Position numbers and translations under genes: made by a program. The notes under the pieces were generated by a model that did no database searches, was not told the origin of the DNA, and worked only from the letters and a program-made list of their open reading frames with translations. Of a stretch of DNA of 58,124 bases, positions 1 to 54,119 are shown one piece after another. Positions within the stretch are counted from its first letter, which is position 1. Every line of letters starts with the position of its first letter. Location of the stretch: positions 1-58,124 of the forward strand of contig NIVC01004146.1 of the NCBI GenBank assembly GCA_002269645.1, in the 5' to 3' direction. The stretch comes from Macrostomum lignano. Its lineage: Eukaryota.

Positions 1-477
1 ACTGGAAGCAGCCACCAACCTGGTCCTCCACAGCTTCCTCCATTCGCCGGCGGGCCTCAGCCTCGAACTCCCTGGCCCGTCGGTCCTCGGCTCGAGCCCC
101 GCGGAACACCCTGGCGTCGCTGCCAGGGCTGCGCTCCATGAACTGCCGGGGTACCGCCGGCTGACGAACAGGTGCAGAGCGCCAGCCTTGCCGCCGTCGG
201 GCCGCAGTGAGCTGAGCGACACCGGCATCGGCGAGGCGTCGGCGAAGCCCAGCCGGACTCTTCGGTTGGCAACGCAGCGTCGGGTGCTGTTGCCATGGAG
301 ACGGAGAGCGGCGCTGGCCGGCGCTTCCAGCGGCTGGCAGGCCTCAGAGCAGCCAATCAGTTCAGCCTGGCAGGTGAGCAGCCGGGTGCCCGGTTTGATG
401 AGGCCGGCGGAGGCTGCGCGGCACAGCAGGGGATCCAGCTGTGCGCCGATGCAGTACCAGCCGTCCGTGAGGGTCAC
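1..477 (-). CDS. BRCA2: BRCA2 exon encoding OB1 and the start of OB2/tower
   Basis: Acceptor AG at 478-479. Translates VTLTDGWYCIGAQLDPLLCRAASAGLIKPGTRLLTCQAELIGCSEACQPLEAPASAALRLHGNSTRR..RRYP, then after a frameshift QFMERSPGSDARVFRGARAEDRRARE. Matches human ELTDGWYAVKAQLD..SANSTR..RAYPIQWMEK. Confidence 0.92.
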   Translation of the reverse strand, partial: MTLTDGWYCIGAQLDPLLCRAASAGLIKPGTRLLTCQAELIGCSEACQPLEAPASAALRLHGNSTRRCVANRRVRLGFADASPMPVSLSSLRPDGGKAGALHLFVSRRYPGSSWSAALAATPGCSAGLEPRTDGPGSSRLRPAGEWRKLWRTRLVAASS

Positions 478-3400
478 CTAAATCGGGAAACTAATTAATG
501 CGTCAAATGATCACACGCTGCTTATAAACTACTGACCAACAGTAGCAAGTGGTAAATAGTATAGGCAGAGAAAAATGCTGGCGAGACAATTGTCAGACGG
601 CCAGACACAGACAGGTAGAGGGGAGACACAGACAGGTAGAGGGGAGACACAGACAGGTAGAGGGGAGACACAGACAGGTAGAGGGGAGACACAGACAGGT
701 AGAGGGGAGACACAGACAGGTAAAGGGAGACACAGACAGGTAGAGGGGAGACACAGACAGGTAGAGTGGCGACACAGACAGGTAGAGTGAAGACAGACAG
801 GTAGAGGGGAGACACAGACAGGTAGAGGGGAGACACAGACAGGTAGAGGGGAGACACAGACAGGTAGAGGGGAGACAAAGACAGGTAGAGGGGAGACACA
901 GACAGGTAAAGGGGAGACACAGACAGGTAGAGGGGAGACACAGACAGGTAGAGTGGCGACACAGACAGGTAGAGTGAAGACAGACAGGTAGAGGGGAGAC
1001 ACAGGCAGGTAGAGGGAGACACAGACAGGTAGAGGGAGACACAGACAGGTAGAGTGGCGACACAGACAGGTAGAGGGGAGACACAGACAGGTAGAGGGAA
1101 GACAGACAGGTAGAGGGAAGACACAGACAGCTAGAGGGAAGACACAGACAGGTAGAGGGGAGACACAGACAGGTAGAGTGGCGACACAGACAGGTAGAGG
1201 GGAGACATAAACAGGTAGAGGGGAGGGGAGGATACACACAGTCTGACAGGGCAATGGCAGCAAGGATTGAATAGAAGCCGGGAGTTTCCTAATAAAATGC
1301 AAAGCCAGCAAAGTGAACCTTGAGCTGCTGCTGCTGCTGTTGCGCTGGCTGCTTTCCAGTTTCTGTTCTGTCCGAGTTGCTGTTCCATTGCAGGCTGACC
1401 ACCTGCAGTGCTAGACGCGAGCTGGGCGGAGAGTCGCGCTCGAGAATTCGACGAATGCAGGGTCTGGTTGATGGAGGAATAAGCAGTAATATCTTGGTTC
1501 ATTTTGTTGAGCCGAAATCGAATTTTTATCTTGTTCGAGCAAGACTCTGCTAATTTGTCCCTAAGTACGAATTGTGCGCTAATAACATTTTCAGCTTTCA
1601 GACAATTATAAAGCACAATAATAAAACTATAATTGATTACACCTGCCCTAAATGGGCAGATGTGCAACCACAGCTCAGCCTCAGATATTGCGCGGCGCAT
1701 CTGAAGGCTGCGTACGGCTGTTCAGTCCAAGGACCTGGGGGGGGGTCGCCACACACAGCCTCAATTACCCCAGCTAGTGCTGGCACCCATTTTACAGCTG
1801 GGTGAACTGAAGAAACGCAGAGTTTAGTGTCTTGCTAAAGGACACAAATCGTTCCGGTGAGATCAGGAATCGAACCCCGACCTTCAAGTCGTGAGTCCGA
1901 CGCTCCAACCACTGGCTACAGAGTGCAAGTAGTATACAATAAATATATGCCACAGGAGACAAAGTGCAACAGAGGTCAGTACATTGTACGTAGAAGTGTG
2001 TACGCGAGAGTGTGTTGCATCACCTTGGCAACAAAACTGAGTCTGTAAGATAGAATAGACCCCCTCGTACACACGCAGGAGCATTTTTATTGCTCTACCA
2101 TTTTGCGTCTTATAAGACAAACTACTCAGCGCAAAATGGTAGCAGAAGAAACACAGTAGACAGCCACATCTTTGCACACGCAGTAAATCTCTGCAGAGTA
2201 GAATGAAAATATTTGAGAACAGATGCATTCAAAGTACGCAACGCGCACCGCCTTTTAACAGCTTTCATGTCTCCAGCGCACAGAGCACAGAGCTATTCGA
2301 GTCTAACGGGGGTGTCGAGGGCATAAGAGACGGACTAACAATAGAGCTCAGAGCTTTCCAGAGCTACTCAACAAGGAGGGCTGGGCTGCAAGTGCGCTTG
2401 AGCAGAAGAGCAAGAGAAAGAGATAAAAATTCTTAAATCTTCATGCTTTTTCACCTGCTAACAAAGATAGAAGTTTAGAGTAAAGACTAAAGCCCAATAT
2501 CTGAGTAGTTGAAATCTGAGCTTAACAGAAGCTGACAGAAAACCTGCAGCTCACAGCTGAGGATGCCAGAAGTTCGTCGAATGACCTTGGCCGCTCGGCC
2601 GAAAAATCAAGTGGTTGTGAGTTACTAACTGTCTAACTGTTGGATACTTTACTAAAATGTTGCATTTTAACATTGGTTAATGACACCCAAAATATTTCAG
2701 TTCGGCGTGGTAGACAACACGCCCAAGCTGCAGTTGGACATGACCGACGAGAGGAGCGTAGAGAACCTATCCAGGGTGTGCCACTTTCTCATGCGAGAGG
2801 GCAAGGCGTGCTTGAGAAGCCTATTCGATTCCAAGCATCCAACGGACGAGCTAACGGAACACTTGGCCTCGCCGGACATTCACCGGACGCTGAGGCGACT
2901 TAAGATCAAAGACATGCTAACCGAAGACGACTGGCAGACGCTCTACCCGAAGGAGAAATCTTCCGTGTCCGCTGACAACTACGACCTGCGTCTGCTGCTC
3001 CTGTTAGTAAAATACACCTGCGATGTGACGAAGCCGCAGCCAAACGGCTGGATGGGAGATCCGGAACCTCGCGATGACAGCCAGGGCGCAGCGCTGCAAC
3101 GCCTACTGGGCATTCAACGCGAGCTCGCCTCGCTGCAGACCTTAAAGGCGAGCGCAGCTAACAGACTGTTTAGCCGCATTGCCGAGCAGCTCCAGCGACT
3201 GGGACACTCGGGTGCAGCAGACTGTATGAACGCATACAAGCAGGACACTAGCATGGACGAGACTGAATCGCGCTTCATTCTGGGCGAATTCCTCGTCTGG
3301 TACCGCCAAGAGGTCAGCCAGTTGAAGAGAGAAATCGAAAACCAAGAACGAAAGAAGAAGCGCGAAGAGATTCCTATTCTGCAGAAACGGCTCAAGACGC

Positions 3401-6400
3401 GCGATTTGGACACGTCGGAAACGAAAAAACGCCAGTCGGTTGTTGGAAAGGCGACGATGGACATGAGCGACAAGTCGCGCTGTCAGAGATGGGCTCATAT
3501 CAAAACTGGCATGGTATTAGCGGAGCGCCTCATTCTCGACAAGTACTACGAACAGTTGCTCAACGATGTAAAAGCGGACACAGTGGTTGAGCATCTGATG
3601 AACAAGGAGATTATTACCCAAGACGAGAGCACGGAAATATTTTCTACTCTGCGCAACAACGAGCAGATGTCGACGTTGATCGACTTTCTAGTGCCAAAAT
3701 CTGGCAATGTGTTGGATGAGTTCGTTGAATCGCTGAAACCCAAGAACGAACAGGTGTACCAGCAGATGCACCAGGACTACCAGGCCGCTAAGGCCGACAT
3801 CCTTGCTAATAAACCACGTAAGTATTTATAGTAATTAATAAATCCTCTTTTAAGAGTTGATCATAGGATTTTTCTGTTTCTTCTGTTTCTTCAGAGGGTC
3901 TGCCTTACTGTAACAACATTCTTCGAGAGCGGTACTCCACCGCGTACGCCAAATGGAATCCGATTCCATGGTACACTAAAGTTGAAACAGACATTGCCGA
4001 ATTCTACTGTCAACAGCAGCTGCTCAATTTGAATGGGTAAGTAGCAGGAAAACAGATCAGATCATTAAGCCAGACATAATTTTCAACTTTGATTTCTCAA
4101 TTTAAAATTGCAGAAAGTCAGTCAACGCCTTCCAAGTTTTTGATTATAAGGAAGGCGAAAAAGACCCGCATACAGTAGTCATTGAGGGTGACCCCGGAAC
4201 AGGGAAGAGTACGCTGGCTAAGTATATGGCCTACAAATGGTCTTTGGACGAAAACGTATTCGGACGGCCTTTCCAACTGCTAATCTTGCTTGATCTCAAA
4301 GTGACAGCGCCCACAGTGAAAGTGATGATGATGGAACAGCTTTTCGGAGGCGACTGCAAGCTGGCCGAACGCGAAATTTGGGAGGTGATGAACATGCACC
4401 AGGCGAGCACACTGCTCATCATAGATGGCTACGAAGACAATCTAAATGATGAGATGAAGAGTTTGCTATTTGAGAACATCATGCCGGAACTGCACATTCT
4501 GGTATTTAGTCAGACTAACTTTACAGTCAGACTGATGCACCGCTACCAGCGAAAGGTAATTCTGACCGGATTCGCCAAATCCCAGGCAGAGGAGTACGTT
4601 CAGAAGTACGTCAAACTAGCTAAGAAGCCGTGGGAACACTTTTCCTCGTTTCTAAACAAGCTAGTAGTGGCAAAAAAATCAACTGAGCTTCAAAAGCTGC
4701 TGGATGCAGCGAAAAAGTCGCAGGAGCCGCAGAGGCGACGCGGGTCGTCAGAATCGGCGACATCTGTGACCTCGGCAAAGCCCAGAGACGAGCGACCTTT
4801 GGAGAGGGAAAACACGGACAAAGTCAGCACAAAACTAAGCCGCAGCTCTAGCAAGGGTCAAGGAAACGATCAGCAGCAACAACAGGATTCAAACGGTGAA
4901 AATTCAAATCAAAGCAAAATAGCGTCCCTGCGACATTACTCACAGGTGCCTTTGTACTGTTCGTTCTTCTGCCTGCTGACCGACATGCGCATGAGTATTG
5001 ATCTGAACTCTCCGACAACAATTGTGGAACAGTTTGTCTCCTGCATCAAGTTGAAGCTGATCGAACGCGAAAAGGAGAGTCGCTTCGAAGCGAATCGCGC
5101 CTACGCAATGCTGTCCGAACGCGCTATGGACACCATAAAGAAAGGCAGCGCAACTTTCATTTTGGCCAAGGAGGACCACATGATGACTAAGTTCGGCCTG
5201 ATTCAACTGGCTACAAACCTCACCGCAGAGGATAACCAGCGCTACATGTTTGGCAATCGTCTTATTCAAGAGTATCTCGCCGCGAAAAATCTAGACACTA
5301 GTGGAACAGATGAAGCTAGCCGCTTCTTCCAGAACATGAGTATGACTCCGATCTCCTACAATGTTGTTGTGTTCTACTGCAGCATCCGCAAGTCGGACAA
5401 CGACACGCCGGCCACCCGGGAACTGTTTGCAAAGATACTGCAGTATAACAAACGGCGAGGCAAAGCGAGTCGCATGAAAATGCCAGCGGCTACGTCGCCA
5501 GAAGACAGTCAACTGGTCGAGGGCAAGATCATGGACTACCAGCTCAGTCTGGAATGCGTGGCGGTCATGGACATGGCCCGCAGAGATCTTGGCAAGAAAA
5601 TTGTTGAATCGCTGCCAGAGCGATTCACCGTGAAGCACGAGGGCATCATTCCGAGATTGTCGCTTACAGGCCTGTCCAAGATGATCAAGTTTAACCACAC
5701 GACCATCCAAGAGGTGGACTTGCGCCTAGATCTGCTAGCCAAAGAGACGCTTGAGGCATACAAAAGTCTGGCTACCGCAATGAAAACGAACGTTCACATC
5801 AAGACGCTCCGCATCTACTGGACAGAGAAGGATCTAATGGCAGACTTCCTTCAAACCGTGTGCTGTCCGGAGCCAGAGGACCCCGCCAATTCTACAGGCC
5901 AGATGGAAATCAGGCGTAAGAAGCCCGATCAGACCGGCTTTCATCTGAAGAATCTTGAGTGCATCGACGAGTCAGGAAAGAAGCTGGACCAGTTGTCGCC
6001 AAAAATGCTAAACAACATGCGCGAAGCCTGCTCGAACATGACTAAACTAGAAACGTTCGCATTTCAAAATTGTCACCACATGTCGCTGGTTGGAAGCATA
6101 ATAAAAAATTTGCCAACTAAATTTGCGGACAACCTGCGCATTCTAGACTTTTCTGGCTGCCAGATGAGCATAGTGGCATCGCAGGATCTCAACGGAAAGC
6201 TGATGGAGAGCAAGAGTCTAGAAGGCCTGATCTTGGCTAACCTCAAGATTGATGCGATGGCCTTTAACACTTTCATCGCCGCATTCTCTAGCAATCGGAC
6301 CATTGTCCTGCTGGATTTGAGCGGAATCCGCCTGGACAATGTCTGCTTCTTCTCTCTATCCGAAGCGCTGAAAATTAATAACAAGCTTGAGAAGCTATTC

Positions 6401-9400
6401 TTACGCCAGGTGCCAATGGACACGAGAGCTTGCAAAGAGGTGGCTAGAATTCTAAAGATTAATAAGATGCTGAAACTTCTCACGGTCACGCAGGAGATCG
6501 TCAGCGAGGAGGGTCGCCGGGTTCTGGGCGAGGAGAGCCAGACGGAGACGCGCAAGAATCGGGCGGTCGTGGACGGCATCGGGGTGGAGTATCGGCAGAG
6601 ACCGACGAACGAGAGGGCCAATACTAAGAGAAACCCGCTGTCAGTCAAGTGAGGAAACCATGGCCGATGATGAAGACGCATCCTAACTATTATTATCAAA
6701 TAACAGTGAATTTCAATAACTTTTTAAAAGTTGTGAATAGTTTTTGTTTAGCACTGCCCTCCTTCGTTAATACGGCCCACAAGAACTTTGTAACTGTTTG
6801 CACAGAACGAGAAATCCTAGAATTTAAGCGATATCTTACTGAGACAAAGATGATTTTTTCTAAAGTAAAAACTGTACGTAAAACATACAGTATTGTTTTA
6901 AGTTTATTTATTCTCTATAATAACATTAAGCTAAATGATACAATATAATTTTCAATTTTTTAACAGACAGCTTTGTAACAGACTAACAGGAAAAGTTCTT
7001 GTCAATTTTTCTAGAAAAAATATAAACAAGTGAATAATAGTTTTTACACTTGGTTGGTTTTAAATGAAAATTTAAGACAGTGGGTACTTTAAACAAGATG
7101 ATGATGAAGCGGCCCCAGTCGCTAAACACAGAATCCCAGCTCCAGTTCCATATAAGACCGATCGTCCTTCTCTCTTGCCGTAGAGGGAGAAGATTAATTT
7201 GCCTGTCGATAAGAAGCCGAGCGACGAAGTTTGGGGTTGCTATGGGGGGAGGGGGGGTTAATGAATCGAATGGAGGCAAAGTGTCAGACAGTAGTGAGAT
7301 AGATAGGACCCATTCAATCGCGGCATCGATAGCGCTCACACTTATACTGTAAGAACTATATAGATTCTATATTCGAAAGTCTTGAGCGCATTGGCAGTTT
7401 GATTAAAATGCCCATAGCTATAGAGGTTGAAGCCACCAAACTCGCGCTGTCCCATCTTATCGTTGGGAGGGGGAGCCATAAATGGGAAAGAAAGAGAGAG
7501 AGAGACCAACAGGAGCTAGATCGGATAGAGAGAGAGCGAGTGAGCAATTATAAGAAACTGGGGAATGTGAAGTTCCGAATGAGAATAAGGCGGAAATGAA
7601 TAGGCCAGAGGCAAATGGTGAGGGGTGATATATAGGGATTCTGAGCAGTATAGACTCAAATAGAATAGGAATGATAGAGATAGAAGAAAGTAAAATGCGG
7701 AGGCACCAAATTCCAGAGCTTCGACCGGTTCGAAGAGTTGATTGGTTGCAAAGAGGCACTGATTTATATACGAGCGTGTATATAATAATACATAGAAGGG
7801 AGAAGACTGCAGGGGCTTGGGATTGAATTTTGTTCGGTTTGCTTTTCAATGGGAGATAATGACAGTGCATAAGAATGAGGAGGTGGTTGGGAGAGGGCAA
7901 GGAGACTCAGAACTTGGACTGACAACTCTTATTCAAGCCTTACATTTTTGGACAACTATAAAACTTGATTGTAGCTTAGTGTCTTTTAACTTCTCTTTTA
8001 TTACTAGGTCGCATTTATATTGCTCAGAATGCAGTTAATTGTGTTTAAGGAATTAGCAATCTGCGCTCCTTCTGTTGGTGACGCAACAAAGAAAGGAATA
8101 ACAGTTTTGAGTAAACTATATGTAAGTAACTACATGTAAGTCTTTTTATATGCAAACCGACAGCTCAGCCGCAGCTATTTCGCGGCGCATTTGAAGGTTG
8201 CGTACGGCTGTTCAGTCCAAGGACTGGGGGGTCGCCACACACCCTCAATTACCCCAGCTAATGCTGGCAACCATTTTACAGCTGGGTGAACTGAAGCAAT
8301 GCAGAGTTAAGTGTCTTGCTCAAGGACGCAAATTGTTTCAGTGGGATCGGAAATCGAACCCCTGACCTTCAAATTGTGAGTCCGACGCTCTAACCACTAG
8401 GCTACAACAGCCGTAGTACAGTCAAGTCAGTATTGCTAATCTCTTCAGGAAAATGATGTTTAAAGGAAAGCAGCATCAGTCTTGAGAAACAGCTATCTAG
8501 CTGAAGATATGAGATTCCCTATGAGTTTTTTTGGCTCAAAACATCTGAGTAACCACCAAGAGCCACAGAATTTCAGCAATTCCCCCCAATGAGCCTTGAC
8601 ATCTCAGCATTTCCCACACGAACCTTGGCATGTCCCAATTACCACACTGTCATTTTAAAATGTTTTCTCTGTGTTTTTGGCATGATTTTCTACACACTTT
8701 AGTTCCTTATCTGAACCTTTCTGAATTTAGGGCAATGGGAATCACACTTTAGGGCAATGAGAATCACACTTTAGGGCAATGGGAATCACACTTTAGGGCA
8801 ATGAGAATCACACTTTAGGGCAATTAGAATCACACTTTAGGGCAATGAGAATCACACTTTAGGGCAATGGGAATCACACTTTAGGGCAATGAGAATCACA
8901 CTTTAGGGCAATGAGAATCACACTTTAGGGCAATGAGAATCATACTTTAGGGCAATGAGAATTACTTTATACTTAAAAGTTCAAACAAAATGACTCGAAA
9001 CAGTCAGAAACTCGCAGACTGGGATAGAGGAAGGTTCTTGTTTTTTGCGTTTTTATTTGTTTACTCAATCCTAGCACGCCAAGTTCTAGCTGTGGGCCTC
9101 CTTGACACGAGGGAGAAAGGGGAAGAAAAGGAAAAAAGGAAGGACGAGGTGCGTCAGTCGAAGGTACACACAGTCGAGCACGGGCGAATAAAATCGAAAG
9201 CTGGTGTGATAGGCCTTGAGACGCAGCCAACAAATGGCCTTTAATATTTTAGCATTGCGGCAGGAAAATCCGCTGTAATCTGACACCGGCAATACAGTTT
9301 ACAAACGAGAGCTGGCCAGCCCACTAAACCAGCTGTCGGATTTCCTCCGCAAAGATGAGCGACAATGAGGAACGAATCTGCCTCGTACCAAAAGACGACG

Positions 9401-12400
9401 ACGAATGGAAGCAGCAAAAGCCGACGGTGACACAAGGAGACACGATCGATGCTACCATAGTAGAGGAGGCTTCAACTTCTTCATCGACGGCTGCAGTCAC
9501 TACGGCACTGTCAGCAACAGCATCGGCACCATCGGCAGCCTCAAACAGCAGCAGCAGCAACAACAAGCGAAGGAGAAAGCTAAGAAGAGCCGGTACAGTT
9601 ATTGGTGGAAGCAAGAGATTTTCGAGCCATGGTGGCGGCGGGAGCGGCAGCGGCGGAGTGGCTGGAGGCAGACGGGTGCTGGCTAAGAAGGCCAGTCTGG
9701 TTGCTATCGCATCGTCCAAGAGGCACACAAGTAAAAAAGTGAGTAGATCGGAGGCCACAAGATGTTGCATCAAGCAGAGGGGGGGGGGGGTTGTAGCCTA
9801 CTGGTTAGGGGGTTCGATTCTTGACCCACCCAGAACAACTTGTGTCCTTGAGAAAGACACCTCAACTCTGCATTGCTTCAGTTCACCCAGCAGTAAAATG
9901 GGTGACAGCATTACCTGGGGTAATTGAGGGCTTGTGTGGCGATGGCAACCCCCAGATTTTAGACTCAACAGCCGCAAGCAGCCTTCAGATGCGCCACGCA
10001 ATAGCCAGTTGTACGAGCTACATCTGCCTATTAAGGCAGGTGTAGTAAAAAAGCTGTCAGTGAAGATGCTATGATAGTGGAGATGAGATCTCACTGGAGA
10101 TCAGATATTAGTAGATAACATGAGAAAGAAATAGGGTTAAGGTGAAGGTAAAGATTATACATCCGTGAATATAAGAGCTCAGTGGAGATTCAATATCAAT
10201 AAGGACGAGATTTCATTAGGGATGAAGGTTGAGATGTCAGTAGGGATAAGGGGATAAGTTCTCAATATGTCATTTCATCACTCGTAGGTAGCTGTAGCCG
10301 ACTGAAACTATAAATAATGATCAAATATGAATACAAGTCAATAAGATTGCAATCAAACAATTCTTTTTCAAAACTATCAATTGCTCGGCCGTATTAATTC
10401 CCCTATAGAACATTAGGGCGCCCAATTATGCTGAAGAAGAGATAAAGAAATTGACTATGAAAAAAGGATGGGAAACGCGCATATTTTTATTTGCATATAA
10501 CAACGCTTGTCCCCTAATTGCGATTGAAATTCAATTATCCAGTACTAAATTTTCTATTTTGAGTTATGGCACGCATTATAGCTATATTGGATTAGAAGAT
10601 AAGCAAATATATATTGGAATAAATTCGGCAAGGGGTGCTTAGGAAAATGAGTAGTGGTTGGGAGTACCAACTAGTTTTCTCCTCTATTCTCCGATTCCAA
10701 CAATCTATAGTGCGAAATGCCAAATTCAGTGTGTTAAGGAAATGATGACGGCTCGAGTTACGAGCCGGTTTCTGGAGAGGATTTAAAAAGCGCCAAACAG
10801 TCCTTCTCCCGTCAACTCACGTCTAGTTGGCAGATACCTGGGTACACGCAAGAGACACCCGCTGAGGACTTAGAGAACTCTTATTCAACTCGCATCAAAA
10901 CTTCTTACAGATATCGGATCATTTTAACAGCATCAACAAGCTGGCTCAGAAGAGGGCTCTGATGCGTTCGAAGCAAATTGACCAGCTGTTGCTGACTGAC
11001 CAGGAAGCCAAGCGCAAGGAGATTCACCTGCTGCTGATTGGTTTGTTTTTTACTCTAGTACAACACGACACACGTTAAAACAGTTTCTTTCTTAAACATC
11101 TAATAATTCCAAATACCTCGACGTCTTAAGTGTGTCTACCATATCCTGAAGTGTGTCTACCACAGCCTGAAGTGTGACTACCACAGCCTGAAGTGTGTCT
11201 AACATAGCATGAAGTGTGTCTACCACAGCCTGAAGTGTGTCTCTCGACAGACTAAAGTGTTTTTACCTCAGACTAAAGTGTCTCACGGCCTCTGTAGTGT
11301 CTCGACAGGATAAAATATGTCTAGTACAGTCTACAAGTGTGTCTATCAATCAAAGTGTGTCTCACCATAAAGTTTAAGTATATTATGCACTTAAAACGAT
11401 TACAGTATATATTAATATTATCCGTTGTTCAGCGCTATTCCGTTAGATTAATTTTTTAACTGCCGATTTTTTTTCAACAAAAACGTATATTAACGTTAAA
11501 TCCATGTTTCACTTTTTCACATTAACCTAGGCGGCAACGGATGCGGCAAGAGTACGTTAGTGAAACAGTTTCGAATTCACTACGGAGACGCATTCCCGGA
11601 CGAGCAACGCAAGGCGCTGATCGGTCAGGTGCTGGAGAATCTAGCAGATGCGGTGCACATTGTGCTGGAGAATATGCGCACTAGGGACATCTGGTTTCAC
11701 GATCCCTACATCAAGGTAGGAAGGTAGCGGTTTTTATTCTACATCAAAGTTTGATTGCAGCTGTTGTTGGTCAAAGGGACTGTTTCGAAATTCTAGAAAT
11801 TATCTATCAGAGGACTTGGGCCAGAAGGCTTTCGCTCGATTCCAGGCGTAGCTACATCAAATTTGAATCCACATATTGGGATATTTTTGCTCGACCCATG
11901 GCAGACAAAGTCGGGGCTGCAGTGCATCTTTAGTGCGCCCCTCATGTCTCTGTACTTGTGTAGCTTTGGCTTTAGGGAACCGCAAAAATTCAAGGGTTCA
12001 CTTCCTCAGTGCCAGGGTTTTGGAGTTGGTTTTCTTGAACAAGCCCCAGGCAAATATTCATACACCAGACCCGAATTCTGTGGCCCCGCATGGAATGCAA
12101 CTCACACGGAGATTTAAGACCATTGTTAATCGCGCACCCAACCAGGACATGGTTGAAGAATTCCAAGCCTACTGTCCGAAATTCAACAGTCTAATATTTC
12201 GCCACTCCGGCAAACAAGTGGACATTGAGAACAGCATTCACTACGCGCACGTTGATTTTGTGGACGACGATACGCTGGCATCGGCGCCGACTGACACTGA
12301 CCTGCCTAGCAGTTGCGGTCACGACAACGCGCATGAACTACTATTATTCGATGTTAGCTACCGAGAGGCCAGGCGAAACAACTTAGACTTGAACGGACTT

Positions 12401-15400
12401 GACGGACTGGCTTCGGGTGGGGACGGCAACGGAGGCGACACGGCGTCAGCTTCGTTAATAATCTATTATAATACGCAGGTGAGAAAGACGCGTCTCACCG
12501 GATGAGTCTTTTTGGAGCATCGTATTAAATAGATAAAGAATAAGAAGTCCACGAGGATTATAAAAAACCAGTTATTTTCTTCTTATCATGTTTTCTTCTA
12601 CATGTAAAATGAAGTCATTCTACAAGCGCACATTAAGATCTTAGTACATTTTGGTCCTCATAAATGTGAATTAATGTAACTATAAGGTCATTTCAAGCAT
12701 GTGAATGCACATTTTTGTCCTTGTTTAGCGCGGCCCGGCGCCTCTAAAGGCTGCGTACGGCTGTTCAGTCCAAGGACTGGCACCCATTTTACAGCTGGGT
12801 GAACTGCAGCAATGCAGAGTAAAGTGTCTTGCTCAAGGACACAAATTTAAACTCAAGGTCCTTTCTATCCGATATATAAAAACACCGCAGGGCCTCGAGG
12901 ACAGCCAGTCCGAAGCGGACGACCGAGACCGTGAGCGAGAGACGCACACGGCCAGGACCTACATTAGCAGTCTGGAATTTGGCAAATTCTCCAGACGTCA
13001 AAGACGCCAACAACTGCAAAACCTGAGCGGAGAGGATGCCGGACTGAACCAGCTGGACGATGGCAGCTCCGACAGCAGCTGCGCCAGGCTGGTTGAGCAC
13101 CTTCACCTAGGCGACGCGCACGACACCGACTCCTCGGGAGGTCGGCGCGCCTCGTCAACCCTGGACGGCTTGCCGCCTCACGACGAAATCGTGTTCTGCT
13201 TCGTGCGACACATAAAGAACTGCATTGTGCAGCCGGAGTTCGAATTGTGCCTCGCTGATCACGAGTACTTCAAGCCGGAGATTACCTACGCCGAGATGTA
13301 GTGAGTTACTTCGTTTCTTTTTTGAGGGTCTGACCGACAGTCTAGCTGTCCTCTTGATTGTTAATCTGTTTTTTTATATTCAATAGTGACTAGTTCAGTA
13401 GGGCAGCGATTCTCATTGCCCTAAAGTGTGATTCTCATTGCCCTAAAGTGTGATTCTCATTGCCCTAAAGTGTGATTCTCATTGCCCTAAAGTGTGATTC
13501 TCATTGCCCTAAAGTGTGATTCTCATTGCCCTAAAGTGTGATTCTCATTGCCCTAAAGTGTGATTCTCATTGTCCTAAAGTGTGATTCTCATTGCCCTAA
13601 AGTGTGATTCTCATTGCCCTAAAGTGTCATTCTCATTGCCCTAAAGTGTGATTCTCATTGCCCTAAAGTGTCATTCTCATTGCCCTAAAGTGTCATTCTC
13701 ATTGCCCTAAAGTGTGATTCTCATTGCCCTAAAGTGTGATTCTCATTGCCCTAAAGTGTGATTCTCATTGCCCTAAAGTGTGATTCTCATTGCCCTAAAG
13801 TGTGATTCTCATTGCCCTAAAGTGTGATTCTCATTGTCCTAAAGTGTGATTCTCATTGCCCTAAAGTGTGATTCTCATTGCCCTAAAGTGTCATTCTCAT
13901 TGCCCTAAAGTGTGATTCTCATTGCCCTAAAGTGTGATTCTCATTGCCCTAAAGTGTGATTCTCATTGCCCTAAAGTGTGATTCTCATTGCCATAAAGTG
14001 TGATTCTCATTGCCCTAAAGTGTGATTCTCATTGCCCTAAAGTGTGATTCTCATTGCCATAAAGTGTGATTCTCATTGCCCTAAAGTGTGATTCTCATTG
14101 CTATAAAGTGTGATTCTCATTGCCCTAAAGTGTGATTCTCATTGCCCTAAAGTGTCATTCTCATTGCCCTAAAGTGTGATTCTCATTGCCCTAAAGTGTG
14201 ATTCTCATTGCCCTAAAGGGTGATTCTCATTGCCCTAAAGTGTGATTCTCATTGTCATAAAGTGTGATTCTCATTGCCCTAAAGTGTGATTCTCATTGTC
14301 ATAAAGTGTGATTCTCATTGCCCTAAAGTGTGATTCTCATTGCCCTAAAGGGTGATTCTCATTGCCATAAAATGTAATTCTCATTGCCCTAAAGGGTGAT
14401 TCAACATCAGTCTGATTACAGTTTTCAAGTTAGCGACAATTTTAACTTAAAACACTAAAAACTTACTAAAATGTTTAAGGCTCTGTAAAATAAAGATCAC
14501 CAATCTAAATAAATCTACAGCTTTATACAACACGTGGATCGCGTCATTCAAGAGGACTATGTGCCAACGCTGCAAGATATTTTGGCCATTCGCAAGCCGA
14601 GCGACGCAGTCAGACAGACCGAATTTCAAATTGCTGGCACCACTTTTCGGTGAGCTTAAAGCGGATGCAGAATGTTCTGTGTCTACTTTCCTGTCGCTTC
14701 TGTGTCCACCTCTTTGTACTCGCTTTGTCCACCTCCCTGTCGCTGTAGTGTCCACCTCTTTGCATCCGCTGTGTCCACCTCTCTGTCGCTGTTATGTCCA
14801 TCTTCCTGTCACTGTTGTGTCCATCTTCCTGTCACTGTTGTGTCCATCTTCCTGTCACTGTTGTGTTCATCTTCCTGTCGCTGTTATGTCCATCTTCCTG
14901 TCACTGTTGTGTTCATCTTCCTGTCGCTGTTATGTCCATCTTCCTGTCACTGTTGTGTTCATCTTCCTGTCGCTGTTATGTCCATCTTCCTGTCACTGTT
15001 GTGTCCATCTTCCTGTCGCTGTGTGTGTCCACCTCTCTGTCGCTGTTATGTCAATCTTCCTGTCGCTGTTATGTCCATCTTCCTGTCACTGTTGTGTCCA
15101 TCTTCCTGTCACTGTTGTGTCCATCTTCCTGTCACTGTTGTGTCCATCTTCCTGTCACTGTTGTGTTCATCTTCCTGTCGCTGTGTGTTTCTACCTCTCT
15201 GTCGCTGTTATGTCCATCTTCCTGTCACTGTGTGTGTCCAGCTCTCTGTCGCTGTGTGTGTCCAGCTCTCTGTCGCTGTGTGTGTCCAGCTCTCTGTCGC
15301 TGTTGTGTCCATTTCCCGGTCGCTGTTGAGTCCACCTTTTTGCATCCGCTGTGTCCACCTCCCAGCCTCCAATGTGTCTATTTCCCTAAATTCCCTAAAT

Positions 15401-18400
15401 TCAACTCCCTAAAATGTTTTGTGTCCACCTCCTTGAATCTGAATCATCTGTGTACACCCCCTGTCTATCTGTGTACACCCCCTGTCTGTGTACACCCCCT
15501 ATCTGTGTACACCCCTGTCTATCTGTGTACACCCCCTGTCTATCTGTGTACATCCCTGTCTATCTGTGTACACCCCCTGTCTATCTGTGTACACCCCCTG
15601 TCTATCTGTGTACACCCCTGTCTATCTGTGTACACCTCCTGTCTATCTGTGTACACCCCTATCTGTGTACACCCCCTGTCTATCTGTGTACACCCCCTGT
15701 CTGTGTACACCCCCTATCTGTGTAAAACCCCTGTCTATCTGTGTACACCTCCTGTCTATCTGTGTACATCCCTGTCTATCTGTGTACACCCCCTGTCTAT
15801 CTGTGTACACCCCCTGTCTATCTGTGTACACCCCTGTCTATCTGTGTACACCTCCTGTCTATCTGTGTACACCCCTATCTGTGCGCACCCCCTGTCTATC
15901 TGTGTCCGACCTCCTTGGCTTTTTCATCACATCTGGATATCATCAGCCAAGTCAATCAATTTATCTGCAATAAAAATCCGCCCAATTTTCATTCAAAACG
16001 ACAGCATGATCGATCTGGCAGGCCAGAGAAGCCAGCGGCACAAGTGGATTCACTATTTCGAAGACGTCAACGCAGTGCTATTCGTCAGCTCTCTGTCTGG
16101 CTTCGGCGAGCTTGTCGAAGAGGAGGACAGAACGGTGAGAAACCACGCACGTCTTTCTAAATCATTAATCATCATAAATCATGTCATAAACAGACAATCC
16201 ATCCGTACATTCTCCAGACAATTAAAATGTCCGACTGTCTATCAACATTCAGCGAGATCATCAGCAACAAGTACCTGTGGAAGAAGGATTTCTTTCTGTT
16301 CTTAAACAAATTGGACGTGTTCGAGCAGAAGTTGAAGTCCAAGAGTATTACAGGACTGTTTCCGGACTATCGAGGTGAGATTTTTCAGAGAAATCGCCCC
16401 TGGTTATCCAAGCAAATCACCCTGATTATCCATCAAAATCGCCCTGATTATCCATCAAAATCGCCCTGATTATCCATCAAAATCGCCCTGATTATCCAAG
16501 CAAATCGCCTTGATTAACCAGGAAAATCGACCTGATTATCCATCAAAATCGCCCCGATTATCCATCAAAATCGCCCTCATTATCCATCAAAATCGCCCTG
16601 ATTATCCATCAAAATCGCCCTCATTATCCATCAAAATCGCCCTGATTATCCATCAAAATCGCCCTGATTATCCAAGAAAATCGCCCTAATTATCAAGAAA
16701 ATCGCCCTGGCTATCGAAGAAAATCGCCCTGATTATCCAAGAAAATCGCCCTGATTTTCCAACGAAATCTCCCACATTATCCAACGAAATCGCCATTTTT
16801 TTCTTGAAAATCGCTCCGATTATCCAAGAAAATTACCCTGATTATTCAAGAAAATCACCCTGATTATCCAAGAAAATTGCCCTGATTATCTGAAAAAATC
16901 GCCCCTAATATAGATAACAACGAACAAACAGAATCGAGACATCAAGTTTGATCCTCCTCAATCGTCCTCAATCTCCAGGCCACGACGAGGTGAACCAGTG
17001 CGCGCAGTACATCAAGGAGAAGTTCACCAGCCTCATACCGAAGAACATGCCAAAGTCCAAGAGAATCTACACGCACCTCATCACGGCCATAGACATTGAC
17101 AGCATGAAGCCCCTGTTCAAAGAAGTGCTGCATCGAATCGCTGAGGCGAACTTGAAGAAGAGCATCACGATTTTTTAGTCTAGCTTGCAAATTCTATGAA
17201 CTAAACAGTCAAATTACTAACTTATGTACTTTTGTCACCAAAGGGATCAAACAGGCTTATTATACGCAACAGTACCTTGCACCTTGCAAATCAAATTGTT
17301 GCGACTTTGTATAAATGTAACTAAACACTAATAAATACATAGATACTGACACAAACAAACAATCGATTGACACAAACCATTACTCTTAATAACACAAATC
17401 ATTACTCTACTGACACAAATCATTACTTTACTGACACAAATCATTACTTTACTGACACAAATCATTACTTTACTGACATAATTATTACTTTACTGACACA
17501 AATCATAAACCTACTGACACAAATAATTACTCTACTGACACAAATCATTAATCTACTGACACAATTTATAAACCTACTGGCACAAATCATTAATCTACTG
17601 ACAGAAATCATTAATCTACTGGCACAAATCATAAACCTACTGACACAAATCATTAATCTACTGGCACAAATCATAAACCTACTGACAGAAATCATTAATC
17701 TATTGACACAAATTATTAATCTACTGACACAAGTTATTAATCTACTGACACAAATCATAAACCTACTGACACAAATCATTAATCTACTGACACAAATCAT
17801 TAATCTACTGACACAAGTGATTAATCTACTGACACAAGTTATTAATCTACTGACACAAATCATTAATCTACTGACACAAATCATTAATCTACTGACACAA
17901 GTGATTAATCTACTGACACAAGTTATTAATCTACTGACACAAGTTATTAATCTACTGACACAAATCATAAATCTACTGACACAAATCATAAACCTACTAA
18001 CACAAATCATTAATCTACTGACACAAGTTATTAATCTACTGACACAAATCATAAACCTACTGACACAAATCATTAATCTACTGACACAAATCATTAATCT
18101 ACTGACACAAGTGATTAATCTACTGACACAAGTTATTAATCTACTGACACAAATCATTAATCTACTGACACAAATCATTAATCTACTGACACAAGTTATT
18201 AATCTACTGACACAAATCATTAATCTACTGACACAAATCATTAATCTACTGACACAAGTTATTAATCTACTGACACAAGTGATTAATCTACTGACACAAG
18301 TTATTAATCTACTGACACAAATCATAAATCTACTGACACAAATCATAAACCTACTGACACAAATCATTAATCTACTGACACAAGTTATTAATCTACTGAC

Positions 18401-21400
18401 ACAAATTTTAAATCTGCTCACACAATATAAGAAGCGGTCAATCCCACATAAGCAAGACAACAACAGGATCCACTAGTTAAAGCACTCACCGGTGTCCTAA
18501 AACGAACTCTCTATCATAGCGATACCTCAGCTGGTGCAGCAGATGTTCCGGGCTGAAATAATTCACCCCAAAATCTTCATCGGGCGAAGCTGCGCCTCTG
18601 GCCGACATTCGCCACACCAGCAACCGGTAATGATTGCGAAGCCAAGCCTCTGTGAGGGCCGGGGCTCGAATCCCAGGCTGAGAGCGCAACTTCGTGAGCA
18701 GCTCCGACCAACCCGTACCGTCAGAGAAACGAAAATCGCCGGCCAATTCAAAATCCATGGTCGGCTGGAGACCGGCGGAGTCGGGAATCGGGGAGGCAGA
18801 CAGGCTGACTCGCTCGCCCGATGCGGCAAGGCGGAGTCTGGCCAGGCTGAGTTCGCCGAGGCCCTTCTCCGTGGCCTGCTAAGGGGGCGCAAAAACATGA
18901 TTGAACTGCATTCACCTTTGACGGACGTCTGCGCTGCTCGACAGCTTTGTTAGCAGGAAAAATTTTATGTTTAAGTTTGAGGCAGACCGACCCAGCAACT
19001 GAGGATCTGGGAGGCTGGTGGGCCATCAAGTGAGGATCTGGGAGGCTGGCCCAGCAACTGAGGATCTGAGAATGGAGGCCCAGCAACTAGGGACCTGGGA
19101 GGGTTGCCCAGCAACTGGGGATCTGAGGGGCTGGCCCAGCAACTGTGGATCTGAGAATGGAGGCCCAGCAACTGTGGATCTGAGAATGGGGGCCCAGCAA
19201 CTGTGGATCTGAGAATGGGGGCCCAGCAACTGAGGACCTGAGAATGGGGGCCCAGCAACTGTGGATCTGAGAATGGAGGCCCAGCAACTGTGGATCTGAG
19301 AATGGGGGCCCAGCAACTGTGGATCTGAGAATGGGGGCCCAGCAACTGAGGACCTGAGAATGGGGGCCCAGCAACTGTGGATCTGAGAATGGGGGCCCAG
19401 CAAATGTGGATCTGAGAATGGGGGCCCAGCAACTGTGGATCTAAGAATGGGGGCCCAGCAATTGGGGATCTAAGAATGGGGGCCCAGCAACTGGGGATCT
19501 GAGGGGCTGGCCCAGCAACTGGGGATCTGAGGGGCTGGCCCAGCAACTGAGGACCTGAGAATGGAGGCCCAGCAACTGTGGATCTGAGAATGGGGGCCCA
19601 GCAACTGTGGATCTGAGAATGGGGGCCCAGCAACTGGGGATCTGAGAATGGGGGCCCAGCAACTGTGGATCTGAAAATGGAGGCCCAGCAATTGGGGACC
19701 TGAGAATGGGGGCCCAGCAACTGTGGATCTGAGAATGGGGGCCCAGCAACTGTGGATCTGAGAATGGGGGCCCAGCAACTGTGGATCTGAGAATGGGGGC
19801 CCAGCAACTGTGGATCTAAGAATGGGGGCCCAGCAATTGGGGATCTAAGAATGGGGGCCCAGCAACTGGGGATCTGAGGGGCTGGCCCAGCAACTGGGGA
19901 TCTGAGGGGCTGGCCCAGCAACTGTGGATCTGAGAATGGGGGCCCAGCAACTGAGGACCTGAGAATGGAGGCCCAGCAACTGGGGATCTGAGAATGGGGG
20001 CCCAGCAACTGTGGATCTGAGAATGGGGGCCCAGCAACTGGGGATCTGAGAATGGGGGCCCAGCAACTGTGGATCTGAAAATGGAGGCCCAGCAATTGGG
20101 GACCTGAGAATGGAGGCCCAGCAATTGGGGATCTGAGAATGGAGGCCCAGCAACACAGAATCTGTAACCCGCAGTTCACACAAACCGCAGCAGCAGTCGG
20201 AGCAGTCGGAGTCTGCGGCTGCAACTGTCGCCGAGGAGCAGCGGCAGGCGAGGGCGCGGGCTTGAACCGGTAGAACGCACCCTTAGTAGCCGGAGTCGCC
20301 GAAGACGCCGAAGCAGCCCCACCTACTGGCGTGTTCAGCCGAGGCGTCCGATGCTGCACCAGCATGGGGGTGGTCCGTGGCCTCGGCATCTGCTGTCTGG
20401 GAGTGGACATGGAATTCGGAGTCTGCGGACTTGGTTGAGCAGCTTTGGTCGAAGGATTTGCCGGAGCGGAATCCTCATTCTCAGCGGCCGCAGCCAGGGC
20501 TTTGGCCCGAGCCATGGCGCTGGCCGAGACCTGCACAGTTCGACCGCCCGCTGTGGAGAAGCCGCCGCCAGCCCCGCCACTAGAAGTACTTGGAGCTGTG
20601 GCAGCCGAGCTGCATCTGGGACTGTCTTTATCGGCTTCATCAAGCAGTTTCTGTGCTCGCTTCAACGCCGAAGCTGAAACGCCAACCGAACGACCGCCTG
20701 CGGTGGAGAAGCCGGCCGGACCCTGATTGACAGGCCTGTTGTTACTAACGGGTTCCAGTTCCGCGTCCTCGGCTAGCTGCCGCGCCTTACGCAGAGCGGA
20801 CGTCGATACTTGCAAAGATTTACCACCGGCGGTTGAAAACCCACCCTTCATATCGACGCTTTCTGGCGACAATTTCCTACCAGATTCGGCAAGATTCTCG
20901 TTGCTCCGATGGTTGGCCGCCTCATCCTCCAATTGTTTGGCTTTTCGCATGGCCTCAGCTGAGAAGCTGACCAATCTGCCTGAGGCTGTACAGAACCCAG
21001 CAGGATTTTTCAAAGCACTGTTCACACCGCTGGAAGGTTTACCAATGTTACTTCGCAGCCAGCTAGTGTCCTCGTCCTCCTCTTCGAGGTCTTTGTCTCT
21101 AAGATCTTTATCCGTTAGGTCTTTGTCCCTAAGATCATTATCCGTTAAGTCTTTGTCCCTGTCCAGCCTAGCTGCACTTTCAGCCAGCACATTCTGTGTA
21201 AAGTTCAAGCTGCAGTCGGCTAGAAGAGCCTCGACGCCTTCTTTCACGTCGCGAATTTGCGTAGCAGTCAAATCGCCGTAATCCATTTCGCCTACTGAGT
21301 TCGAGTCGGTTGCTGCTAGCTTATTTTGTGCTTCGTCTGTCAGCCGGACAGGTGGAACTGGGTCAGGACAGTTGCTACGCGGCTCTGGTGGGCTGGTGCG

Positions 21401-54000: not shown

Positions 54001-54090
54001 ATGGTTGCTGACTGGATGGTTGCTGACTGGATTGTTGCTGACTGACGGCTGCTGACTGGACGGATGCTGACTGGATGGATAGTTGCTGAC
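48100..54090. repeat. ~6 kb 15-bp satellite (GGATGGTTGCTGACT) with GGAT/GGAC stutters and kb-scale higher-order duplications
   Basis: Rare variants recur at ~1.4 kb and ~1.05 kb spacing; a 469-bp duplication lies near the right end. Confidence 0.98.
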
Positions 54091-54119
54091 TAAATAGTTG
54101 CCGACTTTAGAATAGCAAG

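What the first reader, a model, noticed from the sequence alone, without database searches (positions are those of the whole stretch)
2563..6652. NLR with a HEPN - coiled coil - CARD - NACHT - LRR architecture
DZIP3-type HEPN N-termini are known from expanded cnidarian and mollusc NLR repertoires, and CARD-NACHT-LRR is the vertebrate NOD/NLRC pattern. Both effector domains in tandem on one receptor is uncommon. A complete NLR in an apparently flatworm-like genome is of interest for invertebrate innate immunity. Its three introns are only 77-84 nt and repeat-free, unlike the neighbouring genes.
Basis: partly seen in the sequence, partly recalled or inferred. Interest (0 to 1): 0.75.

Follow-up and report, generated by a model that had tools for sequence, protein, structure and literature searches.

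The report
Flatworm NLR with dead HEPN and CARD
This is an intact gene of the flatworm Macrostomum lignano for an intracellular NOD-like receptor (HEPN, CARD, NACHT, leucine-rich repeats); it belongs to an old family found in molluscs, annelids, brachiopods and nemerteans, and its HEPN "nuclease" domain has lost the catalytic motif.

Summary
Window 2563-6652 (+) is a four-exon gene with introns of 84, 77 and 77 nt, all GT..AG, encoding 1283 aa. It is identical to the deposited Macrostomum lignano CDS BOX15_Mlig026612g2/g3.

Pfam matches above the curated cut-offs:
- HEPN_DZIP3, aa 68-206
- CARD, aa 297-376
- NACHT, aa 457-605

The C-terminus matches ribonuclease-inhibitor-type LRRs of NLRP proteins. 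A model built with an alignment superposes the CARD on the Apaf-1 CARD (TM 0.89, 1.5 Å).

The interpretation needs two corrections.
- The architecture is not an oddity. An exhaustive HMMER search finds co-linear full-length relatives with the same domain order in Lingula, Tubulanus, Owenia, Capitella, Lottia, Haliotis and Mizuhopecten. It is therefore a conserved spiralian family.
- All eight members lack the HEPN Rx4-6H catalytic motif that canonical DZIP3-type HEPN domains keep, so HEPN is probably not a second enzymatic effector. The family also replaces the conserved winged-helix His with Asn or Cys.

The most likely mechanism is an NLR that oligomerises and signals through CARD-CARD recruitment, with a non-catalytic HEPN as a binding or regulatory module.

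It is a new member of a known kind and is already in GenBank and UniProt. Interest is moderate to low.

The parts
2563..2616 (+). Exon 1, aa 1-18 (start codon at 2563). This is the least certain part of the model.
   Evidence: matches the deposited CDS. The N-terminus is not conserved among orthologues. An in-frame ATG at 2680 inside intron 1 would give an intron-less alternative start.
2617..2700 (+). Intron 1, 84 nt, GT..AG
2701..3817 (+). Exon 2, aa 19-390. It encodes HEPN, the linker and CARD on a single exon.
   Evidence: the uninterrupted ORF 2680-3831 covers it.
2848..3264 (+). DZIP3/hRUL138-type HEPN domain, aa 68-206. The conserved core extends to about aa 36-220 (2752-3306).
   Evidence: Pfam PF18738, 63.4 bits against a cut-off of 27. 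Orthologues score 88-138 bits. AF2 pLDDT is about 90 and the domain is all-helical. No solved structure matches by sequence or among the listed fold matches.
3112..3138 (+). The site where canonical DZIP3 HEPN domains carry RNxxx(x)H. Here it reads IQRELASLQ (aa 156-164), with no His and no Asn.
   Evidence: Alignment of 122 HEPN segments. Coordinates.
3307..3516 (+).
   Evidence: AF2 shows a helix to about aa 246, then pLDDT below 50 for about aa 241-280. The region is variable and gapped among orthologues.
3535..3774 (+). CARD (death-fold) domain, aa 297-376
   Evidence: Pfam PF00619, 36.2 bits against a cut-off of 23.9. Foldseek: Apaf-1 CARD 8xqk/1cy5, TM 0.88-0.89, rmsd 1.5 Å over 90 columns. 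The family profile hits RAIDD CARD at E 3.6e-10, and also BCL10, CARD9 and Apaf-1.
3818..3894 (+). Intron 2, 77 nt, GT..AG
3895..4036 (+). Exon 3, aa 391-438 (partial codons at both ends). Conserved pre-NACHT segment.
   Evidence: The invariant residues L400, Y404, P413 and W416 lie in this exon. The invariant G438 is encoded across the exon 3/4 junction.
4037..4113 (+). Intron 3, 77 nt, GT..AG
4114..6652 (+). Exon 4, aa 438-1283 plus the stop codon. It encodes NACHT, the helical/winged-helix region and the LRRs.
4169..4615 (+). NACHT NTPase domain, aa 457-605. Walker A is GDPGTGKST (4187-4213) and Walker B is LLIIDGYED (4412-4438).
   Evidence: Pfam PF05729, 56.3 bits against a cut-off of 26.7. 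PDB NLRP1 and NLRP14 NACHT matches. G463, G466, G468 and D542 are invariant. Coordinates.
4676..4918 (+). M. lignano-specific low-complexity insertion, aa 626-706 (rich in Ser, Lys and Gln), after the NACHT core.
   Evidence: Absent from all seven orthologues.
5249..5284 (+). Winged-helix motif FGNRLIQEYLAA, aa 817-828. Asn819 stands where related NLRs have the conserved His (F-x-H-K/R-S/T-F-Q-E-F).
   Evidence: Motif comparison of the family against 10 other NLR relatives in which the motif was found.
5618..6535 (+). Leucine-rich-repeat region, aa about 940-1245. The best-supported part is aa 1107-1244 (6119-6532), with about five ribonuclease-inhibitor-type repeats. A 22-aa lineage-specific insertion lies at aa 1022-1043.
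   Evidence: phmmer against the PDB: NLRP1, NLRP5, NLRP14 and RNH1 LRRs, E 1e-5 to 1e-7. Orthologues hit Pfam LRR_6. Pfam LRR models do not hit this protein itself. The repeat count comes from reading the sequence.

Best explanation
An intact nuclear gene of Macrostomum lignano encodes an intracellular STAND/NOD-like receptor. It belongs to an old spiralian family with a fixed architecture: non-catalytic DZIP3-type HEPN, disordered linker, CARD, NACHT, helical/winged-helix region, LRR.

Shown:
- the gene structure
- the four domains
- the CARD fold
- intact Walker A and B motifs
- co-linear relatives in five other spiralian phyla
- loss of the HEPN Rx4-6H motif across the family
- replacement of the winged-helix His

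Inferred from the NLR/apoptosome paradigm:
- The LRR and nucleotide-bound NACHT hold the protein closed.
- A ligand triggers nucleotide exchange and NACHT oligomerisation.
- The clustered CARDs nucleate homotypic CARD-CARD recruitment of a CARD-bearing caspase or adaptor.
- HEPN lacks the catalytic Arg/His dyad, so it most likely acts as an RNA- or ligand-binding, dimerising or regulatory module rather than as an RNase effector.
For: - Gene model and identity with the deposited CDS.
- Domains above Pfam cut-offs.
- LRR and NACHT matches to solved NLRPs.
- AF2 with an 8-sequence alignment: pLDDT 77 overall, about 90 in HEPN and CARD.
- The CARD superposes on Apaf-1, NLRC4, caspase-1 and ASC CARDs, with TM up to 0.89. 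The family profile hits RAIDD, BCL10, CARD9 and Apaf-1 CARDs.
- Exhaustive HMMER over 1.84 billion representatives finds seven full-length co-linear relatives at 24-29% identity. All have HEPN_DZIP3 + CARD + NACHT. They come from Lingula, Tubulanus, Owenia, Lottia, Capitella, Mizuhopecten and Haliotis.
- 49 invariant columns span all regions, including the linkers.
- Canonical DZIP3 HEPN domains show RNxxx(x)H, whereas all eight family members have no His there.
- The winged-helix His is replaced by Asn or Cys only in this family.
Against: - There is no expression, interaction or biochemical evidence of any kind.
- HEPN families can use alternative catalytic residues (PMC3710099), so inactivity is a prediction.
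- The HEPN fold itself could not be checked against a solved structure.
- No CARD partner in M. lignano was looked for.
- Low copy number with conservation across phyla is unlike typical fast-evolving immune receptor expansions, so an immune role is assumed, not shown.
- The NACHT-only neighbour-joining tree recovers the family as an exclusive group in only 31 of 100 bootstraps.
Confidence: 0.62

Rival explanations
1. Dual-effector receptor. On oligomerisation the HEPN domains dimerise into an active RNase that uses non-canonical residues, while the CARD signals in parallel.
For: - HEPN-NACHT proteins with an intact motif are common in cnidarians and bivalves and are proposed to be RNases (PMC9646362; PMC8260672).
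- Some HEPN families cleave RNA with alternative residues (PMC3710099).
- The family keeps an invariant Asp143 and a mostly conserved Arg in 'ADIVRLQ' upstream of the lost motif.
Against: None of the eight members keeps His at or near the motif position. The motif Arg is itself replaced by Lys, Gln or Ala in six of the eight. The retained Asp and Arg are also present in canonical members, so they are not compensatory replacements.
Confidence: 0.13
2. A conserved housekeeping or developmental cell-death and signalling scaffold, not a pathogen receptor. It would be a low-copy orthologue kept for an endogenous function, such as caspase activation in tissue turnover.
For: - One protein cluster per species among the top hits across distant phyla, and a fixed architecture.
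- All M. lignano copies are more than 99% identical, i.e. assembly or polyploidy copies rather than a diversified expansion.
- The best structural match of the CARD is the Apaf-1 CARD.
Against: The library is clustered at 50% identity, so paralogues of 50-90% identity would be hidden. The NACHT-LRR architecture and its closest solved relatives (NLRP1, NLRP14, NLRP5) are immune or inflammasome-type, and some have reproductive roles. There are no expression data.
Confidence: 0.2
3. Annotation artefact: two neighbouring genes (a HEPN gene and a CARD-NACHT-LRR gene), or a pseudogene, wrongly merged into one model.
For: One copy in the assembly is annotated as a 224-aa HEPN-only protein (P0006) and another as a 1013-aa protein that starts before the CARD (P0005).
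Against: - HEPN, linker and CARD lie in one uninterrupted exon and ORF (2680-3831).
- The CARD-to-NACHT junctions preserve invariant residues, including G438, which is split across a splice site.
- Seven species have the same full-length arrangement.
- P0006 differs only by a frameshifted tail.
Confidence: 0.03

Closest known systems
HEPN-NLRs of cnidarians and bivalves (DZIP3/hRUL138-type HEPN fused N-terminally to NACHT, often with LRR)
   Same: The same Pfam HEPN family sits at the N-terminus of a NACHT-LRR protein. Such proteins are described in PMC3710099, PMC8260672, PMC9646362 and PMC8662601.
   Different: Those proteins usually keep Rx4-6H (194 of 202 HEPN-domain proteins in Pinctada, PMC9646362) and occur as large lineage-specific expansions. 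Those checked here (Montipora, Nematostella, Saccoglossus) have no CARD. This family lacks the motif, inserts a CARD between HEPN and NACHT, and appears to be low-copy.
Vertebrate NLRC proteins (NOD1, NOD2, NLRC4) and invertebrate CARD-NACHT-LRR proteins
   Same: CARD followed by NACHT and ribonuclease-inhibitor-type LRRs. The CARD fold is close to the NLRC4, NOD1 and Apaf-1 CARDs. Automatic names of the orthologues are 'NLRC3-like' and 'NLRC4-like'.
   Different: The CARD is internal, behind about 290 aa of HEPN plus linker. The winged-helix His is Asn. NACHT similarity to any vertebrate NLR is weak (E 1e-8 at best, to NLRP1). There is no evidence of orthology.
Apaf-1 / CED-4 apoptosome
   Same: A STAND NTPase carrying a CARD. 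The best structural match of this CARD is the Apaf-1 CARD (TM 0.89, rmsd 1.5 Å). The inferred mode of action is the same: oligomerisation followed by CARD-CARD recruitment of a caspase.
   Different: The NTPase is NACHT, not NB-ARC. The C-terminal sensor is LRR, not WD40. There is an extra N-terminal HEPN.
Human DZIP3 (hRUL138), the founding member of the HEPN family
   Same: The HEPN domain belongs to the same Pfam family, PF18738.
   Different: According to PMC3710099 Table 1, DZIP3-family HEPN domains are fused to TPR, Zn-ribbon, RING and other domains in various animal lineages. There is no NACHT/LRR context in DZIP3 itself (from general knowledge). It was not compared directly here.

Membership tests
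Animal NOD-like receptors (NACHT-LRR proteins) | Central NACHT NTPase domain with Walker A and Walker B motifs | tested here: met
   PF05729, 56.3 bits against a cut-off of 26.7. Walker A is GDPGTGKST and Walker B is LLIIDGYED. G463, G466, G468 and D542 are invariant in the family.
Animal NOD-like receptors (NACHT-LRR proteins) | C-terminal leucine-rich repeats of the ribonuclease-inhibitor type | tested here: met
   Aa 1107-1244 align to NLRP1, NLRP5, NLRP14 and RNH1 LRRs, E 1e-5 to 1e-7. Orthologues hit LRR_6. Caveat: Pfam LRR models give no hit on this protein itself.
Animal NOD-like receptors (NACHT-LRR proteins) | N-terminal effector or adaptor domain | tested here: met
   CARD at aa 297-376, confirmed by profile and by fold, preceded by HEPN_DZIP3.
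Animal NOD-like receptors (NACHT-LRR proteins) | Conserved winged-helix His (F-x-H-x-S-F-Q-E-F) that contacts the bound nucleotide. Its role is known from Apaf-1, NLRC4, NOD2 and NLRP3 structures (from memory). | tested here: not met
   The motif reads F-G-N-R-L-I-Q-E-Y. The residue is Asn in five family members and Cys in two molluscs (the motif scan did not cover Haliotis; its aligned residue is also Cys). Nine of the ten other NLR relatives in which the motif was found have His. This is a conserved feature rather than a strictly defining one.
Vertebrate NLRC subfamily (NOD1, NOD2, NLRC3/4/5), by orthology | N-terminal CARD directly preceding NACHT, and phylogenetic grouping with the vertebrate NLRCs | tested here: not met
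   The CARD is internal. The best solved NACHT matches are NLRP1 and NLRP14, not NLRCs, and they are weak. The closest relatives are spiralian proteins. No phylogeny with vertebrate NLRCs was made.
DZIP3/hRUL138-like HEPN (PF18738) | Profile match above the curated threshold | tested here: met
   63.4 bits against 27. Orthologues score 88-138 bits.
DZIP3/hRUL138-like HEPN (PF18738) | Rx4-6H endoRNase motif ('mostly conserved' in this family, PMC3710099) | tested here: not met
   The site reads IQRELASLQ. No His is present in any of the eight family members, whereas most other aligned segments show RNxxx(x)H.
DZIP3/hRUL138-like HEPN (PF18738) | All-alpha HEPN fold | tested here: inconclusive
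   The AF2 model is confidently all-helical (pLDDT about 90). No solved HEPN structure appeared among the Foldseek or profile hits, which were dominated by CARDs.
CARD (death-fold superfamily) | Six-helix death fold matching CARD profiles | tested here: met
   PF00619, 36.2 bits against 23.9. Foldseek probability 1.00, TM 0.89, rmsd 1.5 Å to the Apaf-1 CARD. RAIDD CARD at E 3.6e-10 with the family profile.
CARD (death-fold superfamily) | Homotypic binding to another CARD protein | not testable with these tools
   Needs an M. lignano CARD-protein inventory and a binding assay.
Spiralian HEPN-CARD-NACHT-LRR family (defined here) | Full-length co-linear similarity with the same domain order | tested here: met
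   Single HMMER stretches cover query aa 26-621 in Lingula, Tubulanus, Owenia and Capitella. The full-length alignment has 49 invariant columns. Pfam architectures are identical.
Spiralian HEPN-CARD-NACHT-LRR family (defined here) | Monophyly in a phylogeny | tested here: inconclusive
   In a neighbour-joining tree of NACHT segments, the family forms an exclusive group in 31 of 100 bootstraps. In the point tree it groups with 10 N-terminally truncated NACHT proteins of unknown source.

The most novel reading that the evidence does not exclude
This would be an ancient, low-copy, pan-spiralian NLR lineage and the NLR type retained in an early-branching free-living flatworm. A catalytically dead HEPN has been repurposed as an RNA- or ligand-sensing or autoinhibitory module in front of a caspase-recruiting CARD. 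The nucleotide switch is altered (winged-helix His replaced by Asn or Cys). In effect it would be a conserved invertebrate 'inflammasome/apoptosome hybrid' that has not been described as a family.
Probability: 0.2. Interest if true: 0.6.

Novelty: new member of a known kind. Interest (0 to 1): 0.35.

Why it matters
- Flatworm innate immunity is poorly charted, and parasitic flatworms appear to have no NACHT proteins (Schistosoma mansoni: 0 in PMC9646362). A complete NLR in M. lignano, the flatworm model with working transgenesis, gives a tractable entry point for asking what an NLR does in a flatworm and when the family was lost.
- The protein belongs to a conserved spiralian family with a motif-less HEPN. 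This argues against simply reading 'HEPN-NLR' as 'RNase effector NLR', and it gives a clean comparison with the motif-bearing expansions in corals and oysters.
- The gene is already deposited and the domain combination has been recorded in general terms since 2013. The advance is therefore one of annotation and classification, not of principle.

Tried and rejected
- The word-indexed protein search was of little use. The full protein found only itself and two weak NLR hits. The N-terminal 420 aa found nothing, not even the protein itself. The 8-sequence alignment again found only the query and two unrelated NLRs. The family was found only by the exhaustive HMMER search.
- The single-sequence AlphaFold model of aa 1-438 was unusable (pLDDT 41). 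It was replaced by the alignment-based model.
- Foldseek of the two-domain model listed only CARD matches, so the HEPN fold was not tested against solved structures. The profile search of the PDB likewise gave no HEPN hit.
- Pfam LRR models do not detect the C-terminal repeats, and nothing in Pfam matches aa 613-969.
- A first bootstrap script failed on a missing family member. The faster neighbour-joining run gave weak support.
- Zhu et al. 2022 (Gene 843:146807), on NLR families in lophotrochozoans, is the paper most likely to have described this family. It is not held, so I could not check it.
- No paper in the library mentions the locus tags or M. lignano together with a NACHT domain in a relevant way.
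- Contamination or horizontal transfer was rejected: the gene has spliceosomal introns, sits among M. lignano-type minisatellites, and occurs in several assembly copies.

Full report
**1. What is in the sequence**

Joining 2563-2616, 2701-3817, 3895-4036 and 4114-6652 on the + strand gives an open 3852-nt CDS of 1283 aa. The introns are 84, 77 and 77 nt, all GT..AG.

The protein is 100% identical to Macrostomum lignano BOX15_Mlig026612g2/g3 (PAA48443.1, PAA51667.1; UniProt A0A267DGN7, 'CARD domain-containing protein'). The window is the whole of contig NIVC01004146.1 of assembly GCA_002269645.1, and the gene called there has exactly these coordinates.

The 90%-identity cluster holds six near-identical sequences. 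The differences are a few substitutions or truncated models. A second contig overlaps the first 14 kb of the window at 99.8% identity. These are therefore assembly or polyploidy copies, not a diversified gene family.

**2. Domains**

Pfam gives three matches above the curated cut-offs:
- HEPN_DZIP3, aa 68-206, 63.4 bits (cut-off 27)
- CARD, aa 297-376, 36.2 bits (cut-off 23.9)
- NACHT, aa 457-605, 56.3 bits (cut-off 26.7)

Against solved structures, the NACHT aligns to NLRP1 and NLRP14. Aa 1107-1244 align to the ribonuclease-inhibitor-type LRRs of NLRP1, NLRP5, NLRP14 and RNH1, at E 1e-5 to 1e-7. Pfam's LRR models do not reach this C-terminus, but orthologues hit LRR_6.

HEPN, linker and CARD all lie in exon 2, inside one uninterrupted ORF (2680-3831). 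Their tandem arrangement therefore does not depend on any splice. The CARD-to-NACHT connection does depend on introns 2 and 3. The spliced product keeps the family-invariant residues L400, Y404, P413 and W416 (exon 3) and G438, whose codon is split across the exon 3/4 junction. Exon 1 is the least certain part. The N-terminus is unconserved, and an in-frame ATG at 2680 offers an alternative start.

**3. Structure**

A single-sequence AlphaFold model was poor (pLDDT 41). With an 8-sequence alignment the model of aa 30-445 reached a mean pLDDT of 77, with about 90 over HEPN and CARD.

Foldseek against the PDB put Apaf-1 CARD structures first (TM 0.88-0.89, rmsd 1.5 Å, 90 columns, probability 1.00). 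NLRC4, caspase-1, ASC, CARD8, NLRP1 and NOD1 CARDs followed. The family profile also hits RAIDD CARD (E 3.6e-10), BCL10, CARD9, MDA5 and Apaf-1 by sequence.

It is variable in length and unalignable among orthologues. I did not run a coiled-coil predictor and treat the label as unverified.

The HEPN part is confidently all-helical, but no solved HEPN structure appeared among the matches. The evidence for HEPN is therefore profile-based only.

**4. Relatives**

The word-indexed searches were nearly blind to this family. The exhaustive HMMER search with aa 1-622 against 1.84 billion representatives found 1044 proteins at E ≤ 0.001.

The best non-self hits match co-linearly, four of them as a single stretch from HEPN through NACHT and three as two stretches. 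All seven carry HEPN_DZIP3 + CARD + NACHT in the same order. They come from:
- Lingula anatina (brachiopod)
- Tubulanus polymorphus (nemertean)
- Owenia fusiformis and Capitella teleta (annelids)
- Lottia gigantea and Haliotis spp. (gastropods)
- Mizuhopecten yessoensis (bivalve)

Each species appears as one cluster, with isoforms only. The full-length alignment (21-26% identity to M. lignano) has 49 invariant columns spread over HEPN, the pre-NACHT segment, NACHT and the LRRs.

Other hits have only part of the architecture:
- HEPN-NACHT(-LRR) without CARD in Montipora, Nematostella and Saccoglossus
- CARD-NACHT without HEPN in Plakobranchus and Branchiostoma

Short fragments at 39-52% identity from unnamed sequencing-run assemblies (P0012, P0158, P0015) probably represent a closer flatworm relative. 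Their source could not be looked up.

A neighbour-joining tree of NACHT segments gave only weak support for exclusivity of the family: 31 of 100 bootstraps, and the point tree adds ten N-terminally truncated NACHT proteins. Common origin therefore rests mainly on co-linearity and on the shared derived features described next.

**5. Two family-specific features**

(a) HEPN catalytic motif. In an alignment of 122 HEPN segments, most DZIP3-type members show RNxxx(x)H. All eight CARD-containing proteins have no His at or near that position; M. lignano reads IQRELASLQ. The motif Arg is itself Lys, Gln or Ala in six of the eight. Anantharaman et al. describe the motif as the RNase active site. They regard HEPN domains without conserved polar residues as probably inactive nucleic-acid binders, while noting that some families use alternative residues (PMC3710099).

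(b) Winged-helix His. The motif that reads F-x-H-K/R-S/T-F-Q-E-F in nine of the ten other NLR relatives in which it was found has Asn in M. lignano, Lingula, Tubulanus, Owenia and Capitella. It has Cys in Lottia and Mizuhopecten and, by the full-length alignment, in Haliotis. From memory, this His contacts the bound nucleotide in Apaf-1, NLRC4, NOD2 and NLRP3, and its mutation activates NLRC4. That role was not tested here.

M. lignano additionally has two lineage-specific insertions. One is 81 aa of low complexity after the NACHT core (aa 626-706). The other is 22 aa within the LRR region (aa 1022-1043).

**6. How it most likely works**

Shown:
- an intact gene
- four domains
- a bona fide CARD fold
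- intact Walker A (GDPGTGKST) and Walker B (LLIIDGYED)
- conservation across spiralian phyla

Inferred from the NLR/apoptosome paradigm: LRR-mediated autoinhibition and sensing, then nucleotide-dependent NACHT oligomerisation, then clustering of CARDs that recruit a CARD-bearing caspase or adaptor. The HEPN domain lacks the catalytic dyad throughout the family. It is more likely a binding, dimerising or regulatory module than a second enzymatic effector.

Rivals:
- a non-canonical active RNase
- a conserved non-immune cell-death scaffold, suggested by low copy number and fixed architecture
- a merged gene model, which the single-exon HEPN-CARD arrangement and the orthologues make very unlikely

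**7. Comparison with what is known**

- Fusions of DZIP3-type HEPN to CARD, NACHT, DEATH and LRR in animals were tabulated in 2013 (PMC3710099).
- HEPN-NACHT proteins are reported as large expansions in anthozoans (PMC8260672) and in the pearl oyster, where 194 of 202 HEPN-domain proteins keep Rx4-6H (PMC9646362).
- HEPN-NLRs were noted in nine invertebrate taxa (PMC8662601).
- The pearl-oyster paper counts zero NACHT proteins in Schistosoma mansoni.
- No paper in the library links M. lignano to NACHT or NLR genes or names the locus tags.
- A dedicated paper on lophotrochozoan NLR families (Zhu et al. 2022, Gene 843:146807) could not be read and may already describe this family.

**8. Verdict**

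The architecture is a conserved spiralian family, the HEPN is predicted to be catalytically dead, and the gene is already in public databases with these domains. It is a new member of a known kind.

The parts worth keeping are the family-wide loss of the HEPN motif, the winged-helix His replacement, and the presence of this NLR in an experimentally tractable flatworm.

Noticed in passing
window 603-54106 (for example 13408-14402, 17344-18425, 18991-20154, 31179-32535 and 48099-54106): More than 20 minisatellite arrays with 15-48 nt units fill the window outside the NLR gene. The largest is about 6 kb of a 15-nt unit (TGGATGGTTGCTGAC) with GC skew near +0.48.
   Followed up: partly
window 18971-21616 (-): An 881-aa ORF carries four BRCA2 repeats (PF00634, E 5e-30). 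Its 3' part runs through a 29-nt minisatellite (18991-20154). This is probably an exon of a BRCA2-like gene read through into a repeat-filled intron.
   Followed up: partly
window 43504-44661 (+): This ORF matches the C-terminal two thirds of the amiloride-sensitive sodium channel family (PF00858, E 5e-21). It is part of a DEG/ENaC channel gene.
   Followed up: no
window 54120-57339 (-): A PIF1-like helicase ORF (54120-56009) and a Helitron_like_N ORF (56671-57339) together look like a Helitron transposon, sitting directly beside the 6-kb satellite.
   Followed up: no
window 1-14054 against L001 7430-21486: The end of contig NIVC01003379.1 overlaps the start of this contig at 99.8% identity and carries an identical copy of the gene. 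This is an allelic, homeologous or redundantly assembled copy.
   Followed up: partly
window 4676-4918 and 5864-5929: There are M. lignano-specific insertions of 81 aa (low complexity, rich in Ser, Lys and Gln) after the NACHT core and of 22 aa in the LRR region. Both are absent from all seven orthologues.
   Followed up: partly
window 4490-4520 (aa about 565-575, HILVFSQTNF): Many NLRs have a sensor-1 Arg (T-S-R-P) after the fourth strand of the NACHT (from memory). At that position the family shows no conserved Arg: Gln, Glu, Lys, Asn, Ser or Pro (read from the alignment). This depends on the alignment and was not tested further.
   Followed up: no
window 2680-2700: An in-frame ATG inside annotated intron 1 (MTPKIFQ...) would give an intron-less alternative start to the same reading frame.
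   Followed up: no
proteins P0022, P0027-P0029, P0033, P0038-P0042: A set of short HEPN-only proteins, mostly from unnamed environmental or sequencing-run assemblies, also lack the His of the Rx4-6H motif. They are the closest HEPN-only relatives of this family (up to 40% identity). This suggests a wider His-less subgroup of DZIP3-type HEPN domains.
   Followed up: no
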